Below are positions 41,520 to 60,542 of a stretch of 64,000 nt of DNA, in pieces. The notes below the pieces were generated by a model that saw only the letters and a program-made list of their open reading frames with translations, was not told the origin of the DNA and did not search any database. This stretch comes from Laetmonice hystrix. Its lineage: Eukaryota. How positions within the stretch are numbered: the first letter of the stretch is position 1; each line of letters starts with the position of its first letter. The stretch spans positions 19,158,001-19,222,000 of the forward strand of contig OZ249445.1 in assembly GCA_965235115.1 (NCBI GenBank). The letters run 5' to 3'. The position numbers and the translations under genes were made by a program.

Positions 41520-42058
41520 TTACGGTAAGATTGAGTCATTAGGCATGCCGTATGTTGCCGGTTGAATGCCCTGGAATCCTGTCTTGCTGTCTGTATAGTC
41601 GATTGCTGAGATTGGCTGCGAGGGGTCGCTGGCCTCCTTGTCGGCTCCCGAGTGAGCCCGACGTAAAAGGCGCTCCATCCGTTCTCGGCGCTGCTCCTCT
41701 TCGTCTCGCCTGGCGACGAGTTTTTTCGCGAAGTTGAAAACAAACAAATCGATGAGTTCGAAAACTGTCAAAACGCTTCCGCCCAGGAGAAGGCCCATAA
41801 ATCCGCCAACGTCACCTGTTAAACGAAAAAAAAACAGGATGTAACCATCCAGATGTCGATACTATACTCATTTATGGCTTCATTAACATCATTTATAACC
41901 TATATATATACACGTATAGCTATTTTATAAATCTGCATTATAGTGGTGTGCAGGTAAACTTCTTACCCAGAAATTGTGTCAACTGATATGCCTCGATTTG
42001 AGTGACTGTTTGGTGTTTCAGCTGTGCGAAGTAGACATCCATTGCCAGAAAATTGTCT
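41520..42058 (-). CDS. DEG/ENaC beta11-12, TM2 pore and cytoplasmic tail
   Basis: DNFLAMDVYF...EAYQLTQFL|GDVGGFMGLLLGGSVLTVFELID... Confidence 0.93.
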
Positions 42059-45000
42059 CTGGAAATAAATTTGACATGGCAAAGACAAGGTTATTTGGGT
42101 GATTAAAATACATACTTGAACACAGATCTTTGTTTGTTGAATAATTCATATTATTAGTATATAGATCTATTCAAACGTTACTTTTACATCACAGAATTTG
42201 TGTCAAGTTTTGCTGCTGTTGCACGAGTATGTAGAACTATAGTCGTACAGGACAAAGCGATGGCCAATATCTCGTTCTTCCATGTATTTCTGGTAGCCCT
42301 GTTGGATCTTGTACATTGCATCGATCAGCTTCTGTTTATTGAAGACCAGCTGTTCCTCAAAGTTGTCGAGCAGCTGGAGAAGCTCGTTGCAGAAGGCGTG
42401 CAAGGCCTCGCGGAGGTGTTCTTCCGCTTGTTGGCCCACGAAGCTCGATATGGGCACGTCACGGTTCCAAACCTTTATAAGAAAGAAATCGTCGTCCCCA
42501 TTCATAATCCTACATAATGTACTGAAGTTTGAACCGGATGGTATAAATATTATACAGAACTTAAAATGGACCGTCATTTACAAGCACCTAGGGGTGTAGG
42601 CAGAACTGAGATAAGAGGGGGGGGGGGGTCCAACTGAGATTGGGGGGGGGGGTGTGTGTGTTCCCAACCATAATATTAGTAATTCATTTCGATCTATTTA
42701 GTTATTTAGTTATCTATTAATTATCTTCTTTTTTTTCGGGGGGGGGGGGGGGGGTCCAGGCCCGGAAACCCTCCTGGCTACACAGAGTATTTTTTACCTT
42801 CCAATGTTCTCGCCCTATAGCGTTAAATCTAGCGGGGTTGTCCATGTTTGGTGTCGGTAGACCCCATATTTTCATCTTTGCACTTTTATCATAGAAGGCG
42901 TTTTCGTCCAGGTAGCTCTGCATGTCGCTAGCCTTGCGTAGTGCCTCCATGTAGAACTCCAGCAGGTCGTCGCGGATGGCAATGATTCGCTGTCGGAGCG
43001 GTTCGGTCAGTCTGGACTGGATCCGCTCCACAAAGGTCTTGATATGTGACAGGACAGCCGAGCTCTTGTCGTCCGGCTTGAAGTGTTTCAGATAAGCCAG
43101 CTTGTTGATCTTGCCCTGAGTGTAACGCTGCAAAAGACGGCGCACGTCCTTTTCATCCTTCTCTAAGATACAGGCCTCATGCGTCAAGTTATACGTGGTT
43201 CCTATGAGAATGTTTTGGTGTTGACGTTCCTTCACTGATTTCAAAAGTGTCTCCTCCCATCGCTGGACCTTTCCCAGCATGTTCTCATACTCCTCGAGGC
43301 ATTCCTTCAAGTTTGGGAATCTTGCCATGTATACAGCGGTGTTTCTTCTCAACGTCTCGATATGCTCTTTGTGAAACGGTCCGTGACGTAGATGTTCTGG
43401 CAGTGACGGGATGGCACTGACCTGCTCCAGGACCAACACGGTCTGGTTCAGTGTTTTGGTGATTTCCTCCATGTACTGGAGGCAGTATTCGTTGCGGACG
43501 AACAGAGTAGTTGGAATGTTGTGACGCTGACGGAGGGACGCTGCCGTCGGCTTGCCGTACCTGTCCACTTTATTCAACAGTTCCTCCAACGTCTCCCGCA
43601 TCATGTCTGCCTGCGTGACGCACTTCTTGGTCACCTCGTCCAGAAAACGGTGCTTTCGGTTCTTTGTGATTGACATGGCCACCAGCTGCTCGAGTTCCTT
43701 CAGACATACCTAAAGTAACAGGATGGCTTACATAATATTATAGTAATCTAATCTGATCCATGTGTGCGTATGGGGACTCTTGTTTAAGGGGGCAGAGGGT
43801 TTGATTTGCCTGAAATCTGTCCGATTTCTTTTCTTGTTGCTTTTCCCCACTGTTTGGGAGGGCAGATGTCCTCTGCCCCCCCCCCCCCCAGCTCGTACGC
43901 CTATGAGTGATCATCTCTTTTAAAAATCGAGTATTATGTAAACCGCCGACCTCTTTAGAAAAATGTCAGTGTCAAGAAGTCAGAAACTTTAAGTAGGACC
44001 TTGACCGCCTAGTCGAACCCTTTAGTTCTGGAAATCGTATGTTGTAAGCCTAATTTACCTTCGTATCTCCAAGATATATTTGAAGGAGTTGGACTGTGTC
44101 GGCGTAGAGTCTGTTGTATGATGCCTTGAGATGCGGCAGGTCCTCCATAAGGTATTCTAGATCTCCACGGAAAAGTCCGAGTAAAGTCGAAGACGCTGTC
44201 GCTATCTTGGCAAAGGTGGACGTCGCCAGGTCGCCAAGGTATTTGTTGGCAAACCTGATCAGGTGACGATAGAGACGGGCGACACCTGGCGATAAATGGT
44301 ACAGTTAGGGTCAAGGCTTTCCTGCAAATTGTTTTTTTAAAGACTCCCCTAAATTCAATTACTCTCCCGTAAAAGGTTTCCGACTTTTCTCACTTGCCTA
44401 CCCCCATGCTACTTTCAAACTCTCCTTCAAATAAAGTGAAATCCTCCCGGAACCCCTGCTCATCTCTTCTTCCAACCCAACTTAAACGTACCGGCCATAT
44501 TTCTTATATCTGCTATGAAGATGTTCTCGTCGACGCGTTGTTTGACCTCGAGAGCGCCGCGGTATTTGTTTAGTAGGGTGTCCGTGCCCCCTCGCAGAAT
44601 GTAGTCGACGCTTAGATAGGACAACGATGCTGAGGACAACGATGGTTCGTACACAGTCTGCTCACAAGGTTTCGGACACTCGCACCCTTTGCCTCTGGAC
44701 TTGGGCGAATCTGCTCAAGTTTACATTGTACTTTTAGAAAAAAAGCTTCGAACTGGGAAAATCGTCTTTTAATGCACTTTTAAACACGGGCCCTTGGCTG
44801 CAGGCGCGTGTGCAGGATTTTCAGCAGGGGGGTCTCAGGAAATTTTTTAAAAATTAGAAGCTCTGACACCTGATTCCCCGCCATTTAGGGACCATTTTAG
44901 GGCATTATATTTTGTGGATTCATCGCCCCCCCCCCTCTGGACACGCACCTGAGCTGCTTGGCGAGCAAATTATCGGTTGACCTATAGGCGATAAACTTAC

Positions 45001-45189
45001 ACAAATAGAATTGTTGAAAAGATAACTAAATAAGGTGTCACTTACTGATGGCAGGTAAGGCACATGTGAAATATTTGGTGAGGTTGCATATTGGTGGACG
45101 TCCTGCCGGATAAAAGAAAAAAAGGAATGGTAGACCCTACTCGTTATTGAAACAAATATTGGACACACAATTGTGGATAAACCAGAGAA

Positions 45190-45249
<60 letters not shown>

Positions 45250-48200
45250 CTACCGTCGGCGTTTCCCGGCATGTAGGCGTCCCGACATTGGCATTCCCGC
45301 AATACTTCCTTTGTCTCGCACTCTCGGATGCAACGAGAATGCACGTAGTCGTCATAGAAGTTCAATGGCTTTGTGCCGCACTCGCCCCATGGATGCGCTA
45401 AGTTTTTGGCCTTTGAAATAAATGCACATGCAGATTATGTTAAACTACAAGGTACGCCTCACCAACAGCCAGGGCTAAGGAAACGGTCCACTCTCCCGAT
45501 TTTCACCCGATTTCTCATCCGACGATAACAAATATCCATCAAAAATTGTGGTAACCAAAAATCGTTCTTGTCATATTACGCCAGAATTTAATTCTTTAAA
45601 AATAGTTCATTATCTCATCTAAAAGATCGGATGAGAGATCGGAAAAAATCGGGACAGTAGACGTCCGCTATATGCCCCTGTACATAGTCGGTCAGTAGGT
45701 GGGAAATCGGAGTGCCGGGCGAACCAACGAATTTGTAGCAAGAAACTGGCAAATTGCCCAAATAGGCCTATGGCACAAAGAGGTTTCACCCCCGGAGGTG
45801 GGAGGCTCTGCGATCACCAGCCACAGCCCGAGACCACTTACTCATACAATTGCTGGCAATGATTATATGATTGTGTGTGGGGGGGGGGGGGGGGTATTTA
45901 CCTCATTCAGTCTGATACCGACGAGCGTGTGTGTCCCAGGTGGGATAGCAAATCCCAGGTCCCGCACCTGAGGCAGTTCGTTCTTAGTGTGAAGGAAAAC
46001 CTGCGGATGTGATCACGTCAAAATATTTCAGTCACCATCACAATTTTATCATTACTTTCGACTGACTGCCCTCGTTAGCTTGGTAACTTTGCCACTGTAT
46101 TCCCATAGCAGTTCAAAGCGGTTGTCTGTACTAGATATTCATTAACGTGTTAATTAACTGATGATTAACATTACCTCCTTCCGTTCCTACCTTTATTCCT
46201 GCATCACTTTGTGGGCCGCTCATATATTCATACTGTTCAATGTTCAACGTTAAGCTCAGCCCAAATCGCGACCCTGGTTGAAAAAAAAAATAAACGAAGA
46301 ATCATGTGTTTTGGAAGCATAACTGCCTTATAAGGAGGCTGGGGTTAAAGGGGGAAGTGGAGGCTAAGATGTGAAATAATTTTTAGTACAGCTAGGGAAA
46401 TCAGGAAACGGCCTATATTATGACGTTGTACTTTCCTGTATAGGAAAAACGTAGGTCTACCTGTCTGGGCCGTCGTCCGTTCTCTGTGACCGGCGTTGAA
46501 GGTGTAACAGACGCCATAATCGGTTACCTGTTTGGTGAACTCCGAGTAGGAACACTCTTCACCCTCCCACTCACACCTGGGTCACAAAATATGATGTTGA
46601 AATCATGGACACCATGCAAGATATAGACCCTCACTAACATTGTATACAGTATGTTTGTGCTATTGTTCACACACCCTCACTAACATTGTATACAGTATGT
46701 TTGTGCTATTGTTCACACACCCTCACTAACATTGTATACAGTATGTTTGTGCTATTGTACACACACCCTCACTAACATTGTATACAGTATGTTTGTGCTA
46801 TTGTTCACACACCCTCACTAACATTGTATACAGTATGTTTGTGCTATTGTTCACACACCCTCACTAACATTGTATACAGTATGTTTGTGCTTGTTCACAC
46901 ATAACTATAGGAAACAAATGATTGCAGTTACTCAATGCCGAAATAGGAAAGGCCCTTCTTAAGTTGTAGAAGGCACTTACTGGAAAATGAAATCGTCGCC
47001 TTGGTGGGCAGCTCGCATGTATATCTCAGTAAGGTTTAGGGCAACCCCTATGGAGGAAAGTTACAGGATTCACAGTTATAGACCAGTTTCTTTAAGTACA
47101 ATCAGGTTAAAATCTTCGCACTTGACCCCTGTTGGCCCAAGCGTTTTTCTCAGCTTTCCCTATCTACCCTCCATTTTGCCCTTCTTTTCACATCGGAACA
47201 CCCTTTTCAAAATCCTTATCCGTTGCTCATAATGATATACATGTATGTACATGAGGATCGTGTCTTACCAATGTCCTCCTGGGCGACCTTCTCGGGCCCG
47301 TTCAGTAGGCGGATGGCCGAGTCTGGGGACGTGGACTCCGGGGACTTGGACCCGGGGGCAGTCCCCGAATCTTCCGTGCCGTTCAAGCTAATAACTTCTA
47401 TCTGAGCTGATGGGAGATGAAAACGAGCTACAATGGCTATTTGGAATGTTAGTTTCACTCCGGCTTCACTATGGTCATTACTAACTAGGCTTCTCTCTTT
47501 ATTATCAGATGATTGCATATGGTGACAAGGTGTTAAGTGACCAGTAGATCTACACCCGACATCTCTGACACTATTACACAACTCTACGCCTGCATTCACC
47601 ACGTCTTCCATGTACAGGCCTATTAGGTAGGAGTCTTACTTACAAACAATTTGCTCCCTTCTCTTAAGAACCGATTGAGTATCATGATTGGTAACTTTTC
47701 ATTCACAATATGCACAAGATAAGTATACGTGCAGAAGGATTTGCACATGGTCCCCGTACCTGTGCAATCTTCATCTTCCGCCATGTGGCAGTTGGGCATG
47801 CCATTACACTCGAACCGGAGAGGGATGCAGGCAAAGCGAGATGAGCATGTTGTCTCCTCTTCACTGCAATCTGAGGGAAAAAGTTTTCAAGAAAAGTTTT
47901 TGTAAAGAAAATGGTTGAAATAAAGTAATGATGAGGGCCGTATAGGCCTACACAATAGAATTTCAAAGTGAAAGAGAAAACATTAGGTCATATAATATAA
48001 TAGTATTTAAAGCGATAATAGGGTCTATATATGAATGTATATATTAGGTATCACCAATTCTGAATTTAGACTCATCACGGCTTGACTATAATATAAGGTA
48101 TGACCTCGCAGGACAATTTGCATAGACCCTTACTGAAGGCAGGACAGTCTCCATCCACAGTGATGACGTCATCAATTCCGCCTCGAACTTGTTCGCCATT

Positions 48201-51200
48201 TAGTTCGAAAACGAGGCGATAGTAACCCTCGGATAGATCTACCTGTAGGAAAGAGCCATCAGGTCCAAATGAATTGGTGTGTGGGTGTGGGTGTAGGGGA
48301 CGCCCAAACCTTCAAAATCTTAATATTGGTTCATGATTCGGTCCTACCTGTGCGAAATGCCACGCGTTATCCATGACACTTCGCACGCTCCAGACGGTCT
48401 CGCGAGATCCATCGAACTGTTCGAGACTGAGTGAAAGTGTGTTGACGAGTAACTCCTGGCGATCTCTGCCCTGGAGGAAGAAGTAGAACTGAAGACAGGA
48501 GGTGTTGGTGACGAGCTGGAAGGGCGAATTGACCATCGTGTGCGACTTGCCCTCCAGGTGTCTGCTCGTTCTCAGGTAATACCCACCTTGAGCAAAAAAA
48601 CAAACTGTTATTGTACTCTGGAGGCCTGGATCTCCTATGAATATCACTAGTGCTCAATTTTAGGTTCTTTATGACTTTAACATACATTTGTGTCTGCACG
48701 ATATTATTGTACTGATTAGTTACCCTCAGGGTTGTCCTGAAACTATGAGTGATGTCATTTAATGCCTCATGTGGGCTACTAAAAGTTAAAAACGAATTGA
48801 AAGAACGTGCTCACTACATTATTGTGAGCTATAATTTTGCCCCCATATTTCAACAGTACAAGACAGAATTGGTATTGAGATTTTATTCCACAGTCAAAGT
48901 CATATCGAGGCGGTCCGTTTGACTGGACGGGCAACTGGAGTAGCGGGGGAAACCCCAATGTTTTAGCAAGTATCTAACAAACATAAGGCACGAGGGTCCT
49001 ACCAGGGGAGGTATCCTTATATTGTTTACTGCGGGTCCACTTGACTGGGCCTGGAGACACGTCTTGATATCCGCAGTAGTCATCAGGCTCAAAGGTGCAG
49101 TTAAACGACCCGTCTATTACTGAAAACGGCATATCTTAGCTTGCTTTAACCTCAGTCATTGAATCTAGAATACATGCATCTTTAGACAACAGTGTAGGTT
49201 TGTTGGCATTTGACATTTAAGGTACCAGCGTCGTATTTCTTATTGATGCTTTTACCCCGATTTTAAAAATGTATTTATTTATTGGGGGGTTACGCCTAAG
49301 TCAGCCAGGGTATAATTTCGAGGCTGTCAGTTATATTGGTGGAGAACCCGGTGAAAATCAACGAACTTACGGCAGGTAGCTGACTACCCTATACTTACAG
49401 GCGTCTCCAAGGGGATCCAACCCCAGACGTATTATTAGCTTTCCCAGGAAATATTTACAGACTTACCTACTTCACTGCACAAGCCAGACCTCAGGGACAC
49501 CTCATCAATGCCAGCATACTCTTGGGCCCACTGTTCGGCATACATGAACTCAAACACGACGCCATAGAGTCCTGGCCTGAGGTCAGCGGACGCGGTGTGC
49601 CAAGCATTATGCTTCCCATCGTGTAGAATATCTACTATTTTTACAGTGCCACTACTGTTGTAGGTATACACTCTAATGTCTACGTATCTGGTGAAGTATT
49701 GGAAGGTGAGGCAGGTGTCGTTGTGGATAGGTTGGATGGGTGACAGGAGGCGGTTCCAGTCGTGTCGGCGGGGCCGTACGCCCTGGGTGTTGGTGATCGT
49801 TATGTAATAGTCTGAAGGGAAGTGTTAGTGTCGTCATCATTAAATTTAGGGGTTCGAGGATAATTATCCCGGAGGTAAAAGAGTGGCAGAAAAACTGTAG
49901 TAAAAGATATTTACGGTACCTTCTATTTGTTGAGATATTGAAGTTATTGGCCATATAGTTTTGTTTGTCTAGGCCCCGGTTTCAGAAAGGCTTTCAGCAG
50001 CAAACTCGTGGGCCTGTCTCTGCATTGATTGGAGGACCACCTACCGTATGGCTTGAGTTCGGGTGGAGGACCCTCTAGATCGGTGCTGTTATCGTTTGGT
50101 ATCGAGACATTGGTGGGGCCCTCCGATATGTCCTCAAACAGAGGTTCACGGATCCACACGTCATAGATGTTAGAGGAAGTCTGCATGTAGCCGCACGCAC
50201 ATCGGTCACGGAATGAACAACTGATTCCCGTCTCCTCGCTGGTTTCTGGGTATGAGAATGTTTCTGCTTTACAATTCAGATATTTGTAGGGATATCATAA
50301 TATTGGAAAAGGATTAAAGCAGAGTAAAATTATGATGGTATAGGCTAGTAAGTTTGAAAATGGAAGGCCATACAGTGATAGGCCTAAATGATGGCCAGAT
50401 CGAGTGCTTTATATAAGTTTGTGTTCAATTGACATTGATCAATGCACAAAATATTTGTACGAGAGTTGGTTCTATCATATTTTTCAACTTGGGGGGGGGG
50501 GGCTCACTACTGTAGCCCGCAAAATGCACAAAAACAACAATTCGTATTATTATTAATATTATTATTATTATTTATTCATTTATTTTTTTATTTTTTTATT
50601 TATTTATTTATTTCTGTTTATGCCCCCTGTGTCACCTATAGGCTACCTTGAAATAAAACATTAATATTTAGCGCGGTTTTATTCTAACGTCGTGCTTGTC
50701 CGAGGAGGCCTCTAATATTATATGACCGTCTTTTGAAAACTTTGCTCCATCTTTGCGGGAAGGTTGCCGTTATGTTCTCTGCCGTGACCCACGGTGGATA
50801 TGCGGCAGCGCCTGCTGGCGGGAATTTTGAGAAACTAATTGATTCAGTCTCATCACAACGTACGTTGAAGTCGGACCTTTTAACGATCGAGTTACAATAA
50901 TGTCAACGTAGTTTAATAATTATTTCATCATTCATGTCTTATACCTTCTGGACATGCGATCATTATGCATCCAGTCGTCGTTTTATTATGTTATAGAAGC
51001 ACCGAAGGGGAGGTCTGTCCACTGCCGTCTGCAGCGCATGCTAAATATAGTTAGTTCCGTACAAAACGCTAGATGGCGGTCGTCATTCTTAGTTTCAAGT
51101 TAAAACGTCAGATGGCAGCAAAGAAGCTCTGAATTGCTACTTGAACTAGTACTTCCGGTAAAACGCCGTCGCGACCATTTGAAGAGAGGTGGCGCTCCTG

Positions 51201-54200
51201 TAGGAGCCTATCGCTGAACTGAACTGGAAATCAGGCCTCTAAAGCCTAAAGAAAATTGGTTTGGAGATTGCCAAAGTGTAAATAGTTACATCACAAGACA
51301 CATTTGGCCAACAGGCGGATCATTTGGAGATTCAGGTAGGCCTGCTATAGCCGTAATCATGTCGTAGAGGTACCCTGTCCTTGTGTTGCCGTTGGCTTAT
51401 CTTTTCTTCTGTTTTAAATTGTTTATTACCTATAACATAACTTTGTACAAGTATGAAGGGACTAAAGAATCTATCTATTCTAAAAGTGCATAGATAGAAA
51501 GCGATGCCTATGATTCATGTTTCCACTCCGAGCCAGCCAATTAAGGCTCCATGCCTGCTCTGTACGAAATGGTTATAAGGATGTTTTCCCTGTAATTTCT
51601 GCAAGAGATTTGTGGCTTACCCCCCACTTAATCACATTATTTCAGTGTTAGCCTACCTGACCTTTATGAGACCTGGGGAGGTCGGTACTGTATGCTAATA
51701 GGGCTCATCCACTATGTCGCAGGCCCCTCCACTATTAACGATCTGATCGCTAGAGGCAAGCGATCAGATCTTTAATCGCTACCGATCGCTTAGAATATTA
51801 AAAAACTTAAATATTGAGCGATTGGATCGCTAGTTGCTTGATGATGCCTTGATCGCTTGGGCCCTGCGATAGAGTGGATGAGCCCTATTAGATAGACCCG
51901 TCCCTCGTAATGAGCCGTCCATAAATTTCGTAACGCTCAGAAGGGGGTGGGGGTGGGGTTGTACATATATGTCCAAGCGTTACGGTCCATTATAACGCCC
52001 CATTGAAAGCGTTATGGGGGAGGTCGGATTTTGGTCAGAATAGCGTTATGTAATTTATGGACGGCCCCAAATTAGTAGGCCTAATGGGACTTTGACTCTA
52101 TAGCATCACAAAAACAAAGTGAAAATATAACAATGTGCTAATTAAATAGTGATTGGTGATTTCTCTTAATTAAAACATTTTCGTGGTAGTAACTGAAAAG
52201 AAATAATACCACGACTAACAATGTGAAATAAAAGATAACCTGGGCCCTAGAATAAGCCAGGATAAACTAGGCCTACATGCACATGCCAGCACTTGCAATT
52301 AATTGATGTCATGCACGAAGTAAACCCTAGGACGAGAAGAAGAAAAATACAGGGTATTACCAAGCATTTGATAAACGTCGAATCCACCAAAGTTTTGGGT
52401 CAAACGTAAGTCGCCATTAGTACAAAGTTTGACGTAACATTGCCGCTTAGATTTATGAAAGTTGATGACATTAGCTCCTTGGTTCATCATATATTGCATA
52501 CAGCCCTCAAGGTCGAGCCCACGTGTCCCGTTAACATGGAGACATCGACTGGCCAGGCCACGTATCAGCGGATAGACCAGTATGAAATCATAGCCACACC
52601 CTACACCAGAGAGAAAACAAAACACTTTTAATAACCACTTCTAATCAAATGAAGCCATGCAGGCCTATAATAATTACACATCGATGTAGGTGCCTAAAGG
52701 TGTGCCATTTTAACTGTCAATATGAAACATTTAGGGGTAGGAGCCTACAAACTCTTGTAGGCATCCGACACGCTAATTAACTGAAGACAGTTTTTTACTT
52801 TTTACAGGGTGGTGGTGATGGTGGTTGCTTTCACCCCTCCAACACATTGATGACGTAATTGGTAAATATAATAGAGGGCAGGAGGAGTATATCATAGCGA
52901 CAAGGCCATTAAATGGTCGAGATGAAATGGGGAAATTGCTTAGGTACGCCTAGCCTACAGGAGAAACTCCTATGCCCCAATATAGGCCTAGCGACTATCA
53001 GGACTTGGAGTAATACAGGAAATATATTTAGACCTAATCTGATGTTTCTGCAATATGTGTAAATGTCTACAGAGCATTTAGCATGTCGTACAACGATTGC
53101 CCACAAAGTTAACGTAGATTCACAGCAAAAAGAAAAAGAAAGCAAGCCATATGAGTGAGAAACAACCAGCAGAATGTATAAAATAATACCGTTATCAACA
53201 GGGAATCTTCGGATGCACGTCTCGCATTTGATCGTTGTGGGGCAGAAGAAAATGGGGAGTTCTGGTTCGAGCGTCACATTCTCTGCGGAAGTTGTTGTGA
53301 CGTCATACGTGGTTGTGGTTTCTAAGGCTGTCGTCACGGTTGTGTTACTGCTCGTGACGTTAGAATACACATCCATGTCTGTCGTTGTTAGAGTCTCCAT
53401 CGTAGTGGGAACTGCATACATAAACGAATCATTTGTAGGCCTACCTTGACAGATGGGTTACGGCACTCAGTTATCAAAGTCAGAGGGTGATCAAATTTAG
53501 GCAGGTATTGTATCTTAAAAAATGAACTCGAACCCCCATTACAGCTTAAAGTATTAGCCACCCCCATCCCTACCTTATGGATGAGAAAGAACAATTCATT
53601 GCAGAGGGTTTACACAATGTTGCAAGAGAAAAGACATAATGTCTGTAATATTGGCCTAGTCAGGGGAACAATCTCTTATAGGTGTAAATATCTAGGCCCA
53701 CATTAGGCTTATGTCTCATTCGTTACTCACCATACTCGGGTATGATCTCAGTATTCGTTACTCACCATACTCGGGTATGATCTCAGTATTCGTTACTCAC
53801 CATACTCGGGTATGATCTCAGTATTCGTTACTCACCATACTCTGGTATGATCTCAGTATTCGTTACTCACCATACTCGGGTATGATCTCAGTACAGTTTT
53901 CTGTCAGAAGAGTGATGTTGTCAATCATGACGTATGTGAAGTAAGGATCACCAATGACGGCGCTCCAGATGAGTTTGAGGGTGTCATTGGGCAGCATGAC
54001 ATGGGTATAGTTCCACTGGCCTTGGCCTTCACCATACAGAGAGCAGACGTGTTGGCGGCTCTGAAAGTAGCCAATTTATTCGGTCAGAAATCAAAACCAT
54101 TAATTTGTGAACATTGCAAAGTTGGAGCAGTAGGCCTAGGCCTATCTGCTAATAAAAAAAGGATAGACATAGAATATGCTATTATATTTATACTTTTCCT

Positions 54201-57200
54201 TTGGCGGGAAGCATAATGTTAAAAGACGATTTTCTAAAATACCATACTGCAAAGAAACATGGATTCCCAGCTGATTTTGTTACCGTAAATCGGGAAGGTC
54301 CGGTTTGTATATAGACGTCGAGGGTACTTGGTGCCGACAGGTAGTAGTGGAAGCTGACGCAGGCGTTGGCTGTGAGGTGGACGGGTGGGGAGATGAGGGT
54401 AGCCACATCACCATCACGGGTGTTGGCTGTCTGCGCCCTGACTACTGACTGGCCGTCCCCTGGATAATACCAACCAGACACCACACCTTGTATAACTCAG
54501 TCTCTATCGCCATGCTTTGTCATGGATAGTGGTGTTGCAATTGAGGTTTTACGCCAGGGGTAACAGCCAAACATAGAAAGACGGTTCGTTTGACTGGTGA
54601 AGGAAACCAGAGAACCCGGCGAAAACAAAATATTTTGTAGCAAGTGTGGCGTATTTATAAAATGATGACACGGGATGCAACACTCTTAACGGGGTTCCAT
54701 GGATTACCGTAAAAGGGAGCATATATTCACATATATTGGGAGCAGCACGACCCACTCCAGTACCAGTGCTGAACCTTTTCACATAGAAAGTATTTTGATG
54801 CCAGGATATTATAGAAATGGATTGGATCGTGAGAGAATCACCTGTATGATAGTGATCCCATGACACTCGAGAATCAGGGCTCGTCGTGTATCCACACATC
54901 ATCCTGTCGTCAAAGCCACATGACATGTCTTCACTGAAATCTACAGAGTTGGATGAAAATTAGGGAGAGTCAGAATATGAGGGACGAGGAGTGGGCATGA
55001 GGGGGGGGGGGGGGGGCAAGGAGGGGATGGTGTATGTTTGGTTGAAACCTTTCAGGCATCCCCTTTACCCCCCCCCCCCCCACCCCCCGATCTAACACTG
55101 TCCTGAGACAGGGTTCTTCTGAATCATCAAAGGAAACTTGATACAGGGTATGGATGAGTAGTTGCTTTAACAAAAACTGACCAAATATCTAAGGCTTAGT
55201 TCAAAAGCATTTTCTTGCAGGCCTCAGTTTAAATGAAGGATAGGGGGTGTAGATTACACGTACTGCAAGGACGAAGTTCGTCACTAAGGTCCCCACAGTT
55301 ATCGACTCCGTTGCAGAGTTGATCACGTGATATACACTGACCATTGTCGCAGGCAAATTCCACGTCTCGGCATTCTAGTTGGAAGAGCAATTCACTTATA
55401 ATTATTCCTTACGTATATCGAATTTAAAAAGAATAAAATGTAGAAATGTCTATGCTTTTCAAAATTCAATAGTCATAATTAGGAAGATTATCATATTGTG
55501 CTAAACTGAAATTCGTCCATCGGAGAAGGAACATTGACATACCTGGCATTTTTTCGTAAAATGGGCAGGGCCCTATTATTGCATGGCTATATTACTTATT
55601 TTGGGTTATTTGTGGGAGGGAAGCCAACATAATAAAGTAACATTTACGACAGGGCGGGATGTGGCAGTAGTCCCTCCGACCCGTGTCCAAGTCAGTAAAA
55701 CACCAGGGTCCGCGAGTGTCATCGTCAGGGTTACGACAGAAGTTCTCCTGATGGGGCAACATGTGGCGGGTTAGTTCGGGGCTCTGGGACCGCCAGATGA
55801 GACTCTGCAGGAAGCTGGGCACGGCATCCCATCTATAAAACATAAAGACACGTCATCCAGCAGAGGTCCACGGATTGGTATTTTCTTGGGATACTTCAAT
55901 TTTAAATCCTTGATGCCTTGGGGGCGATTTTCAGTACATGGAATTGTTTTCAATGTTTGCTTGCTGTCCAAAGGTTATTGTGAAAAGAGGTATGGACTAC
56001 CTTTGACATGTCCTATTTGATTTGCTGATGGCTAAGGTCCCAGAATAACCTTTCCCCGATGATGTTTCCTTGCAGTATATATCTGGAAGGACAAAGCGTC
56101 ATTTGTATAGCTTCAGATAATATCTTTGACGGCTAGGGTTATATATGTTTATTCCGCTGCCCCGAGCCATAATGGTTAACTGTTTATCCAAAGTTCTGCT
56201 GCCAGTATGAACATTCCCTTCGAACAAAGGCTTGAGGGTGATGTCAGAAGGGCACCCTGACCACAAGGAGTACCTGCTCGTAAAGGGGGCACTTTTTCAC
56301 CATAATTATTGGGGAGGCGGGGGAGGAGAAGATGATATATGATGGCAAGATGTTTCAATTCCAACAGTATATCATTTAGGTGCATCTTGGGCCTACGTGC
56401 AGACACGAAATAATGATAATTTTTCACTGTACCTCTCCTACATTCACCGATGTAAATGTCGTCAATGGCAACATTCAGAAGGTCGGAGTCTTTCGTTGTG
56501 GAAGCTTCCACGACTAACCGGAAGTAGCCGTTTGGTAGTTTTTGATAGCCTCGTTCCCACTCCGTGTTGGTGCCAGCCCCAGAGCGGGACCAGACGGTCG
56601 TCAGAACGTTCTTGGTGGTTTTGGTCCTGATGTTAAGGGTCCCGCCGCGGACTTGGTAATAGAAACTAACGCAGGTTGAACTGGAGGAGAGAATGTATGG
56701 GGACACTATGTGGGCGGCGCTATCAGGCTGGTTGAATTTGGTGGCAGCCAGCAGATATGTTCCTCTACCTAGAATACAAAATGGAAATCATTTTGTAAAT
56801 GAGAGGTTTTCGTTTACCTACCTTGTTGACTTGACAATAATGGACCTAGGTGGGGGGGGGGGGCAAACGCCATGAGGGGCCCGGGCACAGAAAGGTTTTT
56901 TATTTTAGCAAATTAGTGTTTAGTGTTACTTCACCTGACATCTGGGTGTGGTCAAACTCGGGGTATCTTTGGCCAAGTCGTTCCTCTTCGTTAACGAGTT
57001 TCCAGGACATAGATTGCTGAGAGTCCTGAACAAAACTACAAAGGTCGTCCTCAAACCGGCAGCTGGCCCGTGTCTGAACTGTGGTAGAAATATCATAGTA
57101 CCTGACCACATTCGGATAATTATACCTTAATCCCCCACTTACCTGTCCTATTCGCGAAGTGGCCGAAAATTGCCTAAGTCCGAAAAGGTACTACATTGGG

Positions 57201-60200
57201 CGGGGGTAACAATTAATAATAACAGAACAGCCCTATCAAAACCTCTGTCATTGAATAGGACATGCTGAGCTGTTTAAAATTTGAATTTTTATGCGCTAGG
57301 GAATAGGACAGGTAAGTGGGGGTATGTACTCTAGTTATTACGTCTCTTGGTATGCAAATATATGAAAGCTGTACAAAACCTGAACTAACTTGGAAAGATA
57401 TATCTTGAAGGCCAACAACCTTGGTAACGTATCACTGTTCTCACGGTGGCTTTGCTCGACTTACCTTGACACTTCTTTCTGTGAAAATAGTCGACATAAA
57501 GCAGAGGAACGAGCTTTGCGTCTGATGACGTCATATCTAAGGGTGTGACGAAACACTGGCGGTCTCGTCGGTCGTAGACGACCGAGCAGCAGGAGTCACC
57601 ATGCTGTGTGAGACAAACATGGCGGCACACCTGGGCCGACACGTCCCGGTATGACGCCAGCGGCTCCTCCAGACCAAGTAACCATTGGTTACGGTGGACG
57701 AGAAAACCCGTCTTCCACGACTCTGTATGTCATAACATAGAGAACGGTGGGGTGGGGGGTTTAGGGGGCAAGAGGGGCGACTTCTCCGGGACCAGGGCTT
57801 CCCAAGAGCCTGGAGTTTTGAGACTTGCTTTCTGTAATGGGCAAGGAACCCGGTGTAACAGTTTCAAGCCCCCCCCCCCCCCATTCAACAAGTGACATAA
57901 CTATTAACCCTGACCCCTAATTATTCTGTTATTTTGTCATTTGAAACTGCATGGAAGGGGTCATTCGAACCTCAGAGGGGCTCATGACCGGGGGAATGTT
58001 GAATGGGGGTGGGGGGGTGGGGGGGTATTTGGGGTTTTACGCCTTGCAACAGCCAGGGTCATATCACGGCGGTGAAGATGAGATGAAAGTCAGTTTTTCT
58101 TGGTGGAGGAAACCGGAGTACCCGGAGGAAACCACCGACCTTCGGGAAGGAACTGACTGACAAACCTTTCACACATGCAGCCCAGGCCGGGAATCGAACC
58201 CGGGTCGCAGCGGTGTGAGGCGATGGTCCTAGGTGTCATGATGGAGCCGACACCTTAGACCACTCGGCCACCCGAGGCCCCGGGGGGGGGGGGCACATCA
58301 AACCTAATACACAGGTCTGTACTAAATGATGTCCCCTGTTTTTCGGTGATGGTTTCAGGATGGTAGGATATCAAGAAATCGAACTTCAAGTGAGGCCATT
58401 GATAATGAACTACAGTTAATAGTCTGGAACTGTTTAGCTGTTAGGGCTAACCTGTTGGCCGTATATTATTATTGGAAGGACTGCCCGCCCTACCTTCCTG
58501 GTCCTCCTGACCTCGACCCCTGCCTTGTAACTTCATAAAACTTTCCTCCACGATGTCGTGGAGCCCCAGCTTGTGTGTCGCAGACATCCTGGATAAAAGG
58601 ATACCATAAACGTTCAGGCATGAATGTTCTTTAACACGGCTAAAATTTATTGTATCCTATCCTCCTCATCCCTATATCCCTAAGAAATGGAGCAAATTAG
58701 ACTGGAAAACACAAGACCATCAGCATCAGGATTACTTGAGCTTCTTAAACAACCCCCAGAGGCCGTGAAGAAGATACCTGAAGACATTCTGGTTGCAGAT
58801 TGTGACGGCGGGGAAGCCGACAGAGTCAGTGTAGATAACCTCCACGTCGACAGCCTTGGGGTAACTGTACAGGTAGACCAGACGATCCGACATGAACCAG
58901 AAGAAGAAACTGGTCGCCAGTAACACCACGAACGTCCAGAGAACCCTGAAATATAGAGTGGGCGTGGCTCTACCGTAATGGGCGTGACACTCTATACTAT
59001 AGTCGGAATGAAATTAATATACAGGAATTATTATATAGGATTTGGGCGATATGGTTCATATAGAGATACAAGGAAGGGAAGCCTTCAGAGAAGTTATTTA
59101 AGAATGCAGAATTTATCATCGGGGTTCGTTCTACAGCATGTGTGGAGAAGGTTATATTTAACCAGCGTTCAGGTATCAGATAGTTGCCATTTATAGGGTG
59201 AATGTATCATCTCATATATTAGTTGGCCATCAACAGACGATTGTAGCGATTCTGAAGAATGAACATGGGCTGTACCCGTGTTATTGTTTGTTACTGTGTG
59301 TGTTCTCCAATTGTTTGGGGACCTTGGGACGATCAGCTTTGCTCGATATGTTCCCACGGTCAACATGACAGACGCACACGCTGTTGGACCATGTGATGTG
59401 GATGCAAAACTGACAATTAGCAATGCACATTGCGCCGTTCAGGCACGCAGGACATATGCTAGAGCCACAAAATTATGGCCATACGATATTTGTGGTATAG
59501 ACTGTGAAGATATGTACAGGTGTAGTTGGTTGTGTTTTATGTTACTTTTAGCGCTTTAGATCTGGATTGTTCTCTCGGACTAATAGGCCCACTTTGACAC
59601 ATCATTCCAACTGATGGCTTTGCTAATGGTGCATTTGATAATCGTGTGACTGGCTTTTCTTGTAGGAGTTCCATCAAACGCTAACGAGTTGTATGCCAGT
59701 ACATCCGCGCCTATATGTGCAGCGTGCATGTATATGACAGTTGTATGATGTTACTGGGCGGCAGGACGAGCCGTTTGTTCCCGGGGGAGGGACTTGTATT
59801 TAGATATGTGTTATTGATTGGAAACCTGTTGATGGCGGAGACGGGGACGCATCATGTTCCGCCTCTATGGGATTCCTGGTTGCAATGATTGGGGAGAAAC
59901 TCGGGCTGCACTCCCGTGGTATTAAATGATTACAAAATGGGTTCGGCGGAACGAAGTAATTGTAACAATGGCGCGCCATGCTGCACCAATGTTATTAGTC
60001 TCCTATTTGATGCCACAGAGGATTAAAACCCGCAACCCGTTACCCATAAAAGCGCAGTATCGTACGTGCGTTATAGTTTTAGTATGTGCTTAACTGTTCT
60101 GTTTCATGGTATTCATAATTCTCCTTGTGAATAAAAATCACCAATTTACACAAAGGTAAACTAGGAAGACCTAATTTTGAAGGTTGTAACCTATGGTGTA

Positions 60201-60542
60201 ACATATAACCTATGGTGTATATAACATACAAGGCTAGACAAGCCAGGATATAGCAGAGGGTGAGCCACCCCCCGGTAACCATAGCAATAACCCTTTTATG
60301 AACGAATTATAATATAGATCCTCGTTCAGGTTGATGAACCAGATTATACCTTTAAAAATGAAGTTGAGCGATGAGGGCGCTGATGATCACGTGATGTGAG
60401 TAACTTACCGTCTGGACACGTAGGGTGTGTCTGCCGTGATGTAACGGACCCCATGGAACGTGGTGTCCTGGGTGAACTGGAAGACCAGGGACGCCCACGA
60501 TTTCTTCACCCCGTTCCCTGAATCAGTGGCCGCGGTATACAT
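41520..60542 (-). CDS. Giant DEG/ENaC (ASIC-related) channel subunit with multidomain extracellular inserts, ~2090 aa, 33 exons (5' end uncertain)
   Basis: Exons in transcript order: 60542-60409, 58945-58778, 58588-58494, 57722-57465, 57078-56935, 56768-56433, 56082-56001, 55832-55648, 55374-55264, 54940-54842, 54486-54284, 54060-53871, 53411-53190, 52600-52361, 50245-50045, 49811-49467, 49119-49003, 48586-48348, 48242-48134, 47870-47760, 47406-47269, 47047-46981, 46576-46461, 46273-46191, 46000-45902, 45410-45254, 45102-45046, 44710-44492, 44285-44059, 43709-42798, 42472-42249, 42058-41967, 41815-41520. Total 6276 nt, all GT-AG, one continuous frame. Hallmarks: TTFHG, FPAVTICN, CYTFN, GLSLTLNIEQYEY, GFAIPPG, 14 conserved ectodomain Cys, GDVGGFMGLLLGGS. 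Confidence 0.82.
42249..44285 (-). CDS. Large Leu/Glu/Lys-rich, probably helical insertion in the knuckle region (3 exons, including a 912-nt exon)
   Basis: Exons 44285-44059, 43709-42798 and 42472-42249 splice in frame between the post-thumb strand and DNFLAMDVYF. No recognisable named domain. Confidence 0.75.
44492..47406 (-). CDS. DEG/ENaC ectodomain core (end of finger, beta-ball, palm, thumb)
   Basis: IYMRAAHQGDDFIFQCEWEGEECS...DYGVCYTFN; GSRFGLSLTLNIEQYEYMSGPQSDAGIK; VFLH...GFAIPPGTHTLV; PWGEC...CIRECET...CQCR; CECPKPCEQTVY. Confidence 0.92.
45192..45247. repeat. (GA)n microsatellite immediately behind a DEG/ENaC donor site
   Basis: Directly visible. Confidence 0.97.
46628..46900. repeat. 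46-bp minisatellite, ~6 copies
   Basis: Unit CCCTCACTAACATTGTATACAGTATGTTTGTGCTATTGTTCACACA. Confidence 0.95.
47760..47870 (-). CDS. LDL-receptor class A repeat 2 (degenerate acidic motif)
   Basis: CSEEETTCSSRFACIPLRFECNGMPNCHMAEDEDC; phase 1-1. Confidence 0.8.
48134..49119 (-). CDS. MAM domain 4 (3 exons)
   Basis: FNCTFEPDDYCGY...WTR; GGYYL...SCLQFYFF...VWS...WHFAQ|VDL..GYYRLVFE...GGIDDV...GDC. Confidence 0.85.
49467..50245 (-). CDS. MAM domain 3 (2 exons)
   Basis: ISCSF..RCACGY...W; YYI...LLSP...CLTFQY...WHTAS...YGVVFEF...GIDEVSLRSGLC. Confidence 0.8.
51698..51888. mobile_element. MITE
   Basis: TIR ATAGGGCTCATCCACT.T.TCGCAGG / CCTGCGATAGAGTGGATGAGCCCTAT. Confidence 0.7.
51913..52068. 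mobile_element. Harbinger-like MITE
   Basis: TIR GCCGTCCATAAATT.CGTAACGCT / AGCGTTATGTAATTTATGGACGGC. Confidence 0.65.
52361..52600 (-). CDS. Second PAN-like domain exon
   Basis: GCGYDF...CLH...LEGCMQYMMNQGANVINFHKSKRQCYVKLC...GGFDVY; phase 1-1. Fold assignment is from the Cys/aromatic pattern only. Confidence 0.6.
53190..53411 (-). CDS. Thr-rich mucin-like spacer exon
   Basis: PTTMETLTTTDMDVYSNVTSSNTTVTTALETTTTYDVTTTSAENVT..., with several NxT sequons; phase 1-1. Confidence 0.7.
53719..53893 (-). repeat. 35-bp tandem repeat x5 containing an exon end plus GTGAGT donor
   Basis: CGTTACTCAC recurs at 53721, 53756, 53791, 53826, 53861. Confidence 0.95.
53871..54940 (-). CDS. MAM domain 2 (3 exons)
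   Basis: SCGFDDRMMCGY...W; ATLISPP...CVSFHYYL; GQWNYTHV...VMIDNITL...C. Confidence 0.8.
55264..55374 (-). CDS. LDL-receptor class A repeat 1
   Basis: CRDVEFACDNGQCISRDQLCNGVDNCGDLSDELRPC; phase 1-1 exon. Confidence 0.9.
55648..56082 (-). CDS. Kringle domain (2 exons)
   Basis: C...GKGYSGT.AISKSNRTCQR|WD...ENFCRNPDDDTRGPWCFT...DYCHIPPC. Confidence 0.9.
56433..57078 (-). CDS. MAM domain 1 (2 exons)
   Basis: SCRFEDDLCSFVQ...W...DHT...G.GTYL...IVSP...CVSFYY...VWS...W...FRLVVEA...VAIDDIYI..C. Confidence 0.85.
57465..57722 (-). CDS. PAN/apple domain exon (insert module 1)
   Basis: VSAQVCRHVCLTQHGDSCCSVVYDRRDRQCFV fits the PAN Cys pattern; phase 1-1 exon. Confidence 0.75.
58030..58281 (-). mobile_element. 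tRNA-derived SINE (degenerate relatives at ~48905, ~49280, ~54545)
   Basis: Minus strand begins GGGGCCTCGGGTGGCCGAGTGGTCTAAGG (A box) ... GGGTTCGATTCCCGG (B box), followed by a body with a GGTGGAGGAAACCGGAGTACCCGG motif (as read on the + strand) that I recall from widespread invertebrate SINEs. Confidence 0.85.
58494..60542 (-). CDS. DEG/ENaC N-terminus: HG gating motif, TM1, beta1-beta2 and start of finger
   Basis: (MYTAATDS)GNGVKKSWASLVFQFTQDTTFHGVRYI...RVLWTFVVLLATSFFFWFMSDRLVYLYSYPKAVDVEVIYTDSVGFPAVTICNQNVFR. The ATG at 60542 is in frame, but an acceptor at 60517 could link to an upstream exon instead. Confidence 0.9.

What the first reader, a model, noticed from the sequence alone, without database searches (positions are those of the whole stretch)
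47760..57722. DEG/ENaC ion channel carrying a ~1060-aa adhesion/receptor array (PAN-MAM-kringle-LDLa-MAM-mucin-PAN-MAM-MAM-LDLa) inside its finger domain
Seen: 17 consecutive exons (3192 nt) splice in frame between the exon after FPAVTICNQNVFR and the exons leading to IYMRAAHQ/CEW..C. The array has no start codon, signal peptide, TM segment or stop of its own; it begins at an acceptor and ends at a donor. Established: DEG/ENaC subunits are typically ~500-700 aa, and the finger is the variable region that receives gating stimuli (peptides in FaNaC, proteases in ENaC). MAM/LDLa arrays (MAMDC4/MALRD1-type) and PAN-kringle pairs (plasminogen/HGF) mediate adhesion and ligand binding. Inference: a receptor-channel chimera that could be gated by matrix tethering (mechanosensing), by a macromolecular or cell-surface ligand, or by proteolysis. 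I do not know of a characterised DEG/ENaC with this architecture.
Basis: partly seen in the sequence, partly recalled or inferred. Interest (0 to 1): 0.92.

Follow-up and report, generated by a model that had tools for sequence, protein, structure and literature searches.

The report
Giant DEG/ENaC channel with adhesion array
One sodium-channel gene of the DEG/ENaC (ASIC-like) family carries about 1,055 residues of adhesion and ligand-binding modules inside its extracellular finger, plus a second 454-residue helical insert. The same layout occurs in two annelid genomes and an orthonectid genome, so it looks like a real but unstudied receptor-channel hybrid.

Summary
On the minus strand I rebuilt a 33-exon, all-GT/AG, 6,249-nt ORF of 2,082 aa. 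Seventeen exons (57722-47760) encode PAN, MAM, kringle, LDLa, MAM, a T-rich mucin stretch, a PAN-like module, MAM, MAM and LDLa. They lie between finger helix alpha1 and alpha3 of an ASIC-like DEG/ENaC. Every module, and the host intron, is phase 1. The model has only two TM helices (TM1 and TM2), and I found no credible signal-peptide exon.

The decisive evidence is comparative:
- The model is collinear with the Capitella teleta locus and with Intoshia linei OAF70867.1 (2,120 aa).
- In Intoshia, MAM4, LDLa2, the ASC core and the helical insert sit in one 972-codon stop-free stretch, so a nested separate gene is essentially excluded.
- The exon C to PAN junction is a phase-1 GT-AG intron in all three genomes.

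- The second "PAN" has only weak fold support.
- The "nested ORF" at 43709-42206 is a second, family-wide helical insert in the knuckle.
- Uncharacterised orthologues are already in public databases.

No transcript or functional data exist. Gating by tether or ligand through the finger is inference. I rate it a new variant of a known kind.

The parts
60409..60542 (-). Exon A: start codon and cytosolic N-terminus with the HG motif (FHGVRYI)
   Evidence: The homologous stretch is in Intoshia at L001 11049-11165.
58778..58945 (-). Exon B: TM1 plus beta1 (FPAVTICNQNVF)
   Evidence: Pfam ASC 2.3e-11, profile positions 23-77. 72% identical to Capitella L002 867-1037.
58494..58588 (-). Exon C: finger helix alpha1 and a Gly/Arg/Glu-rich linker. 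Its donor is phase 1.
   Evidence: 68% identical to Capitella L002 1115-1195.
57465..57722 (-). Array exon 1: PAN/apple domain (phase 1-1)
   Evidence: Pfam PAN_1 5.5e-7. Orthologous exons occur in about 12 other genomes.
56935..57078 (-). Array exon 2: MAM1, N-terminal part
   Evidence: Pfam MAM profile positions 1-38.
56433..56768 (-). Array exon 3: MAM1, remainder
   Evidence: Pfam MAM 8.6e-14, profile positions 43-157.
56001..56082 (-). Array exon 4: kringle, N-terminal half
   Evidence: Read directly from the sequence. Its length matches the Intoshia kringle.
55648..55832 (-). Array exon 5: kringle, C-terminal half (CRNPDDD)
   Evidence: Pfam Kringle 7.3e-12.
55264..55374 (-). Array exon 6: LDLa1
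   Evidence: Pfam Ldl_recept_a 1.2e-9.
54842..54940 (-). Array exon 7: MAM2, part 1
   Evidence: Pfam MAM profile positions 1-24.
54284..54459 (-). Array exon 8: MAM2, part 2
   Evidence: Pfam MAM profile positions 47-95.
53871..54060 (-). Array exon 9: MAM2, part 3
   Evidence: Pfam MAM profile positions 102-158.
53190..53411 (-). Array exon 10: T-rich mucin-like stretch plus a short Cys motif. The donor is the least certain in the model.
   Evidence: No Pfam hit.
52361..52600 (-). Array exon 11: Cys module, PAN/apple-like by fold only
   Evidence: No Pfam or BLASTP support. 36% identical to Capitella L002 6305-6532. AF2 pLDDT 68; the top Foldseek hits are plasminogen, HGF and apple domains at E = 0.03-0.5.
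50045..50245 (-). Array exon 12: MAM3, N-terminal part
   Evidence: 59% identical to Capitella P0043 residues 20-46, which lie within its full MAM domain.
49467..49811 (-). Array exon 13: MAM3, remainder
   Evidence: Pfam MAM 8e-8. 42% identical to P0043.
49003..49119 (-). Array exon 14: MAM4, part 1
   Evidence: Pfam MAM profile positions 1-26.
48348..48586 (-). Array exon 15: MAM4, part 2
   Evidence: Pfam MAM profile positions 43-116.
48134..48242 (-). Array exon 16: MAM4, part 3
   Evidence: Collinear with P0043 residues 234-366.
47760..47870 (-). Array exon 17: LDLa2. Its donor is phase 1.
   Evidence: Pfam Ldl_recept_a 1.4e-6. Junction checked.
47269..47406 (-). Exon D: Ser/Thr/Pro-rich flexible linker from the array back to the finger
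   Evidence: Poorly conserved and variable in length between species.
46981..47047 (-). Exon E: finger helix alpha3 (LNLTEIYMRAAHQ)
   Evidence: 59% identical to P0043 residues 423-444.
46461..46576 (-). Exon F: ASC beta-ball (CEWEG..YGVCYTFN)
   Evidence: Pfam ASC 2.6e-7, profile positions 156-189.
44492..46273 (-). Exons G, H, I, I2 and J (46273-46191, 46000-45902, 45410-45254, 45102-45046, 44710-44492): ASC palm, thumb and knuckle
   Evidence: 63% identical to Capitella over the ASC core. The nearest solved structure is ASIC1, E = 7e-24 for the Capitella core.
42249..44285 (-). Exons K1, K2 and K3 (44285-44059, 43709-42798, 42472-42249): second insert of 454 aa, all-helical, between the knuckle and beta11
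   Evidence: Collinear with P0014, P0043, P0045 and P0046. Shares a single ORF with the knuckle in Capitella. No Pfam or PDB relative.
41967..42058 (-). Exon K4: palm beta11-beta12 (MDVYFAQLKHQ)
   Evidence: 65% identical to P0043.
41520..41815 (-). Exon K5: TM2 with the GGS filter belt, the cytosolic tail and the stop codon
   Evidence: Pfam ASC profile positions 430-454. Aligned to chicken ASIC1 TM2.

Best explanation
Shown or strongly supported: this is one gene for a 2,082-aa subunit of an ASIC-like DEG/ENaC channel.

- Its ectodomain carries two insertions at the top outer corner of the channel.
- The first is a 1,055-aa array (PAN, MAM, kringle, LDLa, MAM, mucin, PAN-like, MAM, MAM, LDLa). 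It is spliced between finger helices alpha1 and alpha3 and joined by flexible linkers on both sides.
- The second is a 454-aa all-helical domain between the knuckle and palm strand beta11.
- TM1 acts as the signal anchor that puts the disulfide-rich array outside the cell.
- The pore hallmarks are intact, so the protein probably still conducts.
- The array looks assembled by exon shuffling of phase-1 modules into a phase-1 intron, and it is conserved in annelids and the orthonectid Intoshia.

Inferred (about 0.35-0.4): the array binds matrix, a cell surface or a macromolecular ligand. Displacement of alpha1-alpha3 by that binding or by force then gates the trimer. This is the same lever that FMRFamide moves in FaNaC and that proteases release in ENaC.
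For: - Gene model: 33 GT/AG exons forming one ORF.
- Domains: identified per exon.
- Topology: only two TM peaks; 50 Cys and 17 sequons in the array.
- No signal-peptide exon in phase with the PAN exon.
- Pore and family motifs: HG, FPAVTICN and the thumb Cys pattern; GDVGG...GGS aligned to ASIC1 GDIGG...GAS.
- Nearest solved relatives of the Capitella orthologue's ASC core are ASIC1 and ASIC2.
- Intoshia OAF70867.1 has ASC, MAM, kringle and LDLa, with PAN at the same place.
- One 972-codon stop-free stretch in Intoshia contains a MAM, an LDLa, ASC profile positions 128-391 and the helical insert.
- The Capitella locus is collinear from TM1 to TM2 with roughly 50-nt introns.
- The exon C to PAN intron is phase 1 in all three genomes.
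- All ten modules are bounded by phase-1 introns.
- Array modules are 42-49% identical to Capitella, versus about 22-26% between the Capitella MAMs and non-orthologous MAM exons of the window.
- The finger alpha1-alpha3 corner is the gating lever and the proposed tether site across the superfamily (PMC11026163).
Against: - There is no transcript, protein or current for any member.
- All orthologues are automatic gene models. The Intoshia N-terminus and the Capitella 5' half are mis-predicted.
- Both array boundaries are phase 1, so an array-less isoform would stay in frame.
- An array-less relative exists in Dimorphilus.
- The linkers have no conserved protease site.
- The only structure model of the core plus helical insert was unusable, with pLDDT 36.
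- The C. elegans module-bearing EGAS channels gave no currents in oocytes (PMC10424705). Function may therefore need partners.
Confidence: 0.75

Rival explanations
1. Nested independent gene. The 17 exons belong to a separate secreted MAM/LDLa-type protein that lies in an intron of the channel gene, and gene predictors (and the reader) fused the two.
For: - Modular MAM/LDLa proteins are common stand-alone genes.
- Reading through the exon-17 donor gives a stop after 44 codons.
- A TM-like ORF sits at 60282-60082 in the A-B intron, with weak phase-1 donors.
- The Capitella annotation calls the kringle as a separate 82-aa gene.
Against: - In Intoshia, MAM4 and LDLa2 share one uninterrupted ORF with the ASC core.
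- The order is identical in three genomes.
- The exon C to PAN junction is phase 1 in all three genomes, with introns of only about 170-770 nt.
- Capitella introns are about 50 nt, which leaves no room for a promoter or terminator.
- There is no credible signal-peptide exon.
- The Capitella split coincides with a retroelement gag on the opposite strand.
Confidence: 0.04
2. Alternatively spliced cassette. The gene makes both a conventional-finger channel (exon C joined to D or E) and the giant form, and the array-less form may be the major one.
For: - Skipping from C to D or from C to E stays in frame and gives a finger like that of the array-less Dimorphilus relative.
- All modules are phase 1-1, so any subset could be skipped.
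Against: - In Intoshia, part of the array (MAM4 and LDLa2) cannot be skipped, because it shares an exon with the ASC core.
- The array is under clear constraint: 42-49% identity to Capitella and intact ORFs.
Confidence: 0.25
3. The chimera is real, but the array is not a gating element. It anchors, clusters or sorts the channel, or mediates homophilic MAM contacts at a particular membrane or cuticle site, while another stimulus (protons, a peptide) gates the channel.
For: - From general knowledge: MAM, LDLa, kringle and PAN domains are adhesion and ligand-binding modules. CUB/LDLa auxiliary proteins cluster other ligand-gated channels.
- Long, poorly conserved flexible linkers of variable length (about 17-46 aa on the C side) would transmit force or conformational change poorly.
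- The ASC core is ASIC-like.
Against: - The insertion point is exactly the alpha1-alpha3 segment that moves 3-5 Å on gating in FaNaC and is the proposed tether site in mechanosensitive members (PMC11026163).
- A related Owenia model carries different modules (LamG plus mucin) directly upstream of the same finger-alpha3 segment. This suggests the site itself is what is used.
Confidence: 0.4
4. Adhesion receptor with a degenerate, non-conducting channel scaffold.
For: The ectodomain additions (about 1,500 aa) dwarf the channel core. EGAS channels gave no currents in oocytes (PMC10424705).
Against: - The HG motif, beta1 motif, GDVGG and GGS belt, and the conserved Glu in TM2 are all intact.
- The stretch from beta11 through TM2 is the most conserved region: 79% identity to Capitella.
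Confidence: 0.08

Closest known systems
Acid-sensing ion channels (ASIC1/2), DEG/ENaC superfamily, Pfam PF00858
   Same: Two TM helices, HG motif, FPAVTxCN beta1, thumb Cys pattern, and GDxGG...GxS in TM2. ASIC1 and ASIC2 are the best solved-structure matches to the orthologous core, at E about 1e-23.
   Different: About four times longer. It has a 1,055-aa module array in the finger and a 454-aa helical insert in the knuckle. Proton-sensor residues were not examined, and no phylogeny was built, so ASIC-clade membership is open.
Predicted orthologues: Intoshia linei OAF70867.1 (A3Q56_01374), Capitella teleta CAPTEDRAFT_191217, Paralvinella palmiformis LSH36_50g03009
   Same: The same collinear architecture and junction phases. 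Identity in the ASC core is 63% (Capitella) and 49% (Intoshia).
   Different: All three are 'hypothetical' or 'MAM domain-containing' models with errors. The Intoshia N-terminus is fused to a transposase piece and uses the wrong TM1 frame. The Capitella and Paralvinella models are truncated. None is described in any paper found.
ENaC finger / GRIP domain (protease-released inhibitory tracts)
   Same: An extra domain inserted in the finger between alpha1 and the later finger helices, used as a gating switch (my recollection of the ENaC structures; also PMC11026163).
   Different: The ENaC insert is about 100 aa of beta-strands with furin sites. Here the insert is 1,055 aa of unrelated modules, and the linkers have no furin-type motif.
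C. elegans MEC-4/MEC-10 touch channel with matrix partners MEC-1, MEC-5 and MEC-9
   Same: A DEG/ENaC proposed to be coupled to extracellular matrix at the outer ectodomain corner (tether idea cited in PMC11026163).
   Different: There the matrix-binding modules are separate proteins. Here comparable modules are built into the subunit itself.
[quoted passage not shown]
   Same: A named precedent for DEG/ENaC subunits that carry additional extracellular modules. Also functionally uncharacterised: no currents in oocytes (PMC10424705).
   Different: EGF modules, not MAM, LDLa, kringle or PAN. No EGF hit occurs in any exon here. The position of the EGF modules relative to the finger was not checked.
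MAM/LDLa array proteins (MALRD1 / MAMDC4 type) and PAN-kringle proteins (plasminogen/HGF)
   Same: The same module types; MAM and LDLa alternate in part of the array. The exon-11 model resembles plasminogen and HGF PAN domains.
   Different: No own signal peptide, TM or stop. PAN and kringle are separated by a MAM. There is no protease domain.

Membership tests
DEG/ENaC (PF00858 ASC) | ASC profile match above Pfam's gathering score | tested here: met
   Exon B scores 43.8 bits and exon F 30.5 bits against a cut-off of 23.6. Orthologues score 198 and 148 bits.
DEG/ENaC (PF00858 ASC) | Exactly two TM helices flanking a large Cys-rich ectodomain | tested here: met
   The only Kyte-Doolittle 19-residue peaks of 1.5 or more are aa 46-64 and aa 1993-2011. 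There are 69 Cys between them.
DEG/ENaC (PF00858 ASC) | Cytosolic HG motif and post-TM1 FPAVTxCN strand | tested here: met
   FHGVRYI and FPAVTICNQN are in the model. Both are conserved in Capitella and Intoshia.
DEG/ENaC (PF00858 ASC) | TM2 GxS selectivity belt preceded by GDxGG | tested here: met
   GDVGGFMGLLLGGS aligned to chicken ASIC1 GDIGGQMGLFIGAS.
DEG/ENaC (PF00858 ASC) | Trimer that conducts amiloride-sensitive Na+ current | not testable with these tools
   Needs expression and electrophysiology.
ASIC subfamily (proton-gated) | Groups with ASICs in a phylogeny and keeps the proton-sensing residues | not tested
   Only E-value ranking against solved structures is available: ASIC1/2 > ASIC5 > ENaC > FaNaC. 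No tree was built and no residue check was made.
Stand-alone MAM/LDLa array proteins (MALRD1/MAMDC4 type) | Own signal peptide and own membrane anchor or stop | tested here: not met
   No in-phase signal-peptide exon. No TM in the array. The array is continuous with ASC in one Intoshia ORF.
Plasminogen/HGF-type PAN-kringle proteins | N-terminal PAN directly followed by kringles and a serine-protease-like domain | tested here: not met
   A MAM separates PAN from the single kringle, and no protease domain hit occurs.
EGAS (EGF plus ASC) channels | EGF modules on an ASC subunit | tested here: not met
   No EGF family hit in any exon at E <= 1.
Annelid/orthonectid giant ASC orthologue group (OAF70867.1, CAPTEDRAFT_191217) | Collinear array in the finger, helical insert before beta11, and a phase-1 exon C to PAN junction | tested here: met

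The most novel reading that the evidence does not exclude
A self-contained receptor-channel. The trimer carries three built-in matrix- or ligand-binding arms on the finger helices that gate DEG/ENaCs, and possibly a helical crown from the three knuckle inserts. Force or a macromolecular ligand would then open the pore directly, without separate tether proteins. That would be a gating mode not yet shown for this superfamily.
Probability: 0.3. Interest if true: 0.85.

Novelty: new variant of a known kind. Interest (0 to 1): 0.66.

Why it matters
How extracellular force or large ligands reach the gate of DEG/ENaC channels is an old open question. The tether model for MEC-4-type channels rests on separate matrix proteins.

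Here the candidate tether modules are covalently inserted in the alpha1-alpha3 finger segment, which structures show to be the gating lever. The idea therefore becomes directly testable: express the channel with and without the array, and swap modules.

The gene is also a clean example of phase-1 exon shuffling into an ion-channel gene. It defines an unstudied channel family so far recovered only from annelids and an orthonectid, and the family has a second domain of unknown fold. Capitella teleta is a laboratory species in which it could be studied.

Tried and rejected
- Signal-peptide search. I scanned 64000-57723 for ATG-started hydrophobic exons with donors. None was found in phase 1 with a usable donor. 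Only a TM-like ORF at 60282 with weak donors turned up.
- The 330-aa and 124-aa open stretches at 43709-42206 first looked like a nested gene. I rejected that because they align collinearly inside the Intoshia, Capitella, Owenia, Paralvinella and Dimorphilus proteins.
- Word-indexed homologue search with the whole Intoshia protein found only itself. Restricting the query to the conserved ASC core, and then to the Capitella protein, found the annelid relatives.
- Transcript evidence. None of the 42 PAN-exon hits is spliced; those inspected are genomic exon-level ORFs or unrelated PAN-repeat proteins. I could not submit the spliced model to the search tools, because it has no reference and I did not type long sequences.
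- AlphaFold2 of the Dimorphilus relative with a 5-sequence alignment gave pLDDT 36. I did not use it for fold search.
- The helical insert has no Pfam or PDB sequence relative.
- Exon 11 as PAN. Pfam and BLASTP were negative. The fold match is weak, with E >= 0.03.
- Literature searches for ASC with MAM or kringle, for the accession numbers and for the assembly accession found nothing relevant. The Owenia locus was not on record.
- A suspected G/C-rich intron repeat family was not confirmed by self-BLAST.

Full report
**What is there**

The window is eukaryotic DNA, and the feature lies on the minus strand. Stop-free stretches show DEG/ENaC (ASC) exons on either side of a run of MAM-, LDLa-, kringle- and PAN-like stretches.

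I scored GT donors and AG acceptors, required frame continuity, and so rebuilt the gene. The model has 33 exons, all with AG/GT boundaries, and 6,249 nt. It encodes 2,082 aa with a single terminal stop.

They are the top-scoring in-frame combinations, both are phase 1, and their contexts are canonical (AAG|GTAGGG, ACATACAG|AG, ACAG|GTACGG, TCCCATCAG|CT). Between them lie 17 exons. The difference is probably the weak donor of the mucin exon.

**Domain identity**

Pfam on individual exons gives the following:
- PAN_1 (5.5e-7).
- MAM1 in two exons (profile positions 1-38 and 43-157).
- Kringle C-half (7e-12). The N-half is a separate 82-nt exon that I found in a short open stretch.
- LDLa (1.2e-9).
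- MAM2 in three exons.
- A T-rich mucin-like exon.
- An 80-aa Cys module.
- MAM3 in two exons.
- MAM4 in three exons.
- LDLa (1.4e-6).

- It has no Pfam hit even at E <= 10, and no BLASTP similarity to exon 1.
- It is conserved in Capitella at 36% identity.
- A two-sequence AlphaFold model has mean pLDDT 68, with 83-86 in the core.
- The closest PDB folds are plasminogen, HGF NK1, parasite apple lectins and factor XI apple domains. These matches are weak, with E = 0.03-0.5.
- I call it PAN-like and weakly supported.

The flanking exons are ASC. Exon B covers profile positions 23-77 and exon F covers 156-189. The array therefore sits between finger helix alpha1 (exon C) and alpha3 (exon E, "EIYMRAAHQ").

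**One gene or two?**

Within the window:
- The model has only two hydrophobic TM peaks, aa 46-64 and aa 1993-2011.
- The array has 50 Cys and 17 N-glycosylation sequons, so it must be extracellular.
- No ATG-started hydrophobic exon with a usable phase-1 donor exists upstream of 57722. The only TM-like ORF, at 60282, has weak donors and lies upstream of exons B and C.
- All ten modules are bounded by phase-1 introns, and the host intron is phase 1. This is the classical signature of exon shuffling.

Comparative evidence decides the matter.
- An exhaustive search with the PAN exon found Intoshia linei OAF70867.1 (2,120 aa). It has ASC, MAM, kringle and LDLa, with PAN at residues 187-268. It aligns collinearly to the window from PAN to beta11-12, just before TM2.
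- In the Intoshia contig, residues 1026-1996 lie in a single stop-free stretch of 972 codons (L001 19526-22444). That stretch holds MAM4, LDLa2, ASC profile positions 128-391 and the helical insert. The 3' boundary of the array therefore needs no splicing there.
- Capitella teleta CAPTEDRAFT_191217 (1,275 aa) reads MAM, MAM, LDLa, ASC core, helical insert, TM2.
- The Capitella locus also holds TM1/beta1 (72% identical), exon C, PAN, MAM, kringle plus LDLa, MAM and the PAN-like module. They lie upstream, on the same strand and in the same order.
- The window model maps to that locus as residues 45-2018 onto 867-14783, and the measured introns are about 50 nt.
- The annotated split coincides with a retroelement gag gene on the opposite strand.
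- The exon C to PAN junction is a phase-1 GT-AG intron in Capitella (364 nt) and Intoshia (about 170 nt), as in the window (771 nt).
- Array modules are 42-49% identical to Capitella. The ASC core is 63% identical, and the stretch from beta11 through TM2 is 79% identical.

A nested independent gene is thus very unlikely.

**A second insert**

The open stretches at 43709-42720 and 42577-42206 first looked like a nested gene. With 44285-44059 they encode aa 1500-1953. This region is 454 aa, Leu-rich and charged, and has few Cys. It lies between the knuckle and palm strand beta11.
- It aligns inside all relatives.
- It shares a single ORF with the knuckle in Capitella.
- It has no Pfam or PDB sequence relative.
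- It was predicted all-helical, though in a model too poor to use, with pLDDT 36.

Dimorphilus DgyrCDS14464 has this insert but no finger array. An Owenia model carries Laminin_G_3 plus a T-rich stretch directly upstream of the same finger-alpha3 segment. Its locus could not be fetched, so a mis-fused model is not excluded. The helical insert is therefore family-wide. The finger site appears to accept different modules.

**Is it still a channel?**

- The HG motif, FPAVTICN and the thumb Cys pattern are present.
- TM2 reads GDVGG...GGS...E and aligns with chicken ASIC1 GDIGG...GAS...E.
- The nearest solved relatives of the Capitella orthologue's ASC core are ASIC1 and ASIC2 (E about 1e-23), then ASIC5, ENaC and FaNaC.
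- The pore region is the most conserved part.

**How it may work (inference)**

The FaNaC1 structures show that alpha1-alpha3 of the finger, next to the knuckle of the neighbouring subunit, form the ligand pocket. Ligand binding moves alpha2/alpha3a by 3-5 Å, and that movement pulls the thumb and opens the pore. The authors note that this corner also holds the ENaC protease and ion sites and the proposed matrix-tether sites of mechanosensitive members (PMC11026163).

Both inserts here emerge from that corner. I therefore favour a model in which the array binds matrix, a cell surface or a large ligand, and biases or drives gating through the finger. I put this at about 0.35-0.4. The main functional rival is that the array only anchors or clusters the channel.

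Protease gating of the ENaC kind has no sequence support. The one RX[KR]R motif lies inside MAM3 and is absent at the aligned position of the Capitella orthologue by eye.

Both boundaries are phase 1, so an array-less isoform is possible. In Intoshia, however, MAM4 and LDLa2 cannot be skipped.

**Novelty**

- I found no paper describing an ASC protein with MAM, kringle, LDLa or PAN, and none citing the orthologues.
- Uncharacterised orthologous predictions are public. The architecture is therefore not new to databases, but it is unstudied.
- My verdict is a real feature and a new variant of a known kind.
- All relatives recovered are annelid or orthonectid. That may partly reflect the limits of the word-indexed searches.

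**Limits**

There is no transcript or functional evidence. The spliced model could not be submitted to the database tools. The species was not identified. No phylogeny was built.

Noticed in passing
window 44285-42249 (exons K1-K3): A second large insert of the same gene. It is a 454-aa Leu-rich, charged, all-helical region between the knuckle and palm beta11, with no Pfam or PDB relative. It is conserved in Capitella, Intoshia, Paralvinella, Owenia and Dimorphilus. At first sight it looks like a nested intronless gene.
   Followed up: yes
L001 (Intoshia LWCA01000103.1) 10001-13450: The N-terminus of the public Intoshia model OAF70867.1 is wrong. It starts with what looks, by eye, like a mariner-type transposase fragment, and it reads the TM1 exon in the wrong frame. 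The true TM1 (12415-12540), FPRVTICNQN (12915-12968) and exon C (13344-13443) are all present.
   Followed up: partly
L002 (Capitella KB310159.1) 3802-4047 and 7503-9094: The Capitella gene is annotated in pieces: an 82-aa 'kringle' gene and the 1,275-aa P0043. A retroelement gag (PEG10_N-capsid) gene sits on the opposite strand inside the array and probably caused the split.
   Followed up: partly
P0045 (Owenia fusiformis, 1,037 aa): A related channel model carries a partial Laminin_G_3 domain and a T-rich mucin stretch directly upstream of the same finger-alpha3 segment where this gene has its array. This hints that the finger site accepts different modules. The locus was not on record, so the model could not be checked.
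   Followed up: partly
L003 (Dimorphilus CAJFCJ010000041.1) 6001-9482 and 1597-1761: A nearly intronless 905-aa relative with the helical insert but no finger array. A second ASC TM2-like hit lies on the opposite strand about 4 kb upstream.
   Followed up: partly
window 60282-60082 (-): A 67-codon ORF in the A-B intron starts with a 22-residue hydrophobic stretch (MVTGGWLTLCYILACLALYVIYTIGYML). Its phase-1 donors are only weak. It may be chance or an alternative first exon.
   Followed up: partly
window about 45248-45190: A dinucleotide microsatellite immediately after the exon I donor. It reads as (LS)n in the exon's frame and could mislead ORF-based exon calls.
   Followed up: no
window 25140-28296 (+), 39669-40100 (+), 13663-14073 and 18321-18680 (+): Other apparent genes, judged from motifs by eye only. 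One is MFS / monocarboxylate-transporter-like, with a 413-aa ORF. One is a sulfotransferase-like ORF. Two ORFs resemble nuclear-receptor ligand-binding domains. A weak LDLa-like tblastn hit lies at 6229-6483 (+).
   Followed up: no
window 35658-35820: The only run of N in the window (163 bases). It lies outside the gene and was left untouched.
   Followed up: no
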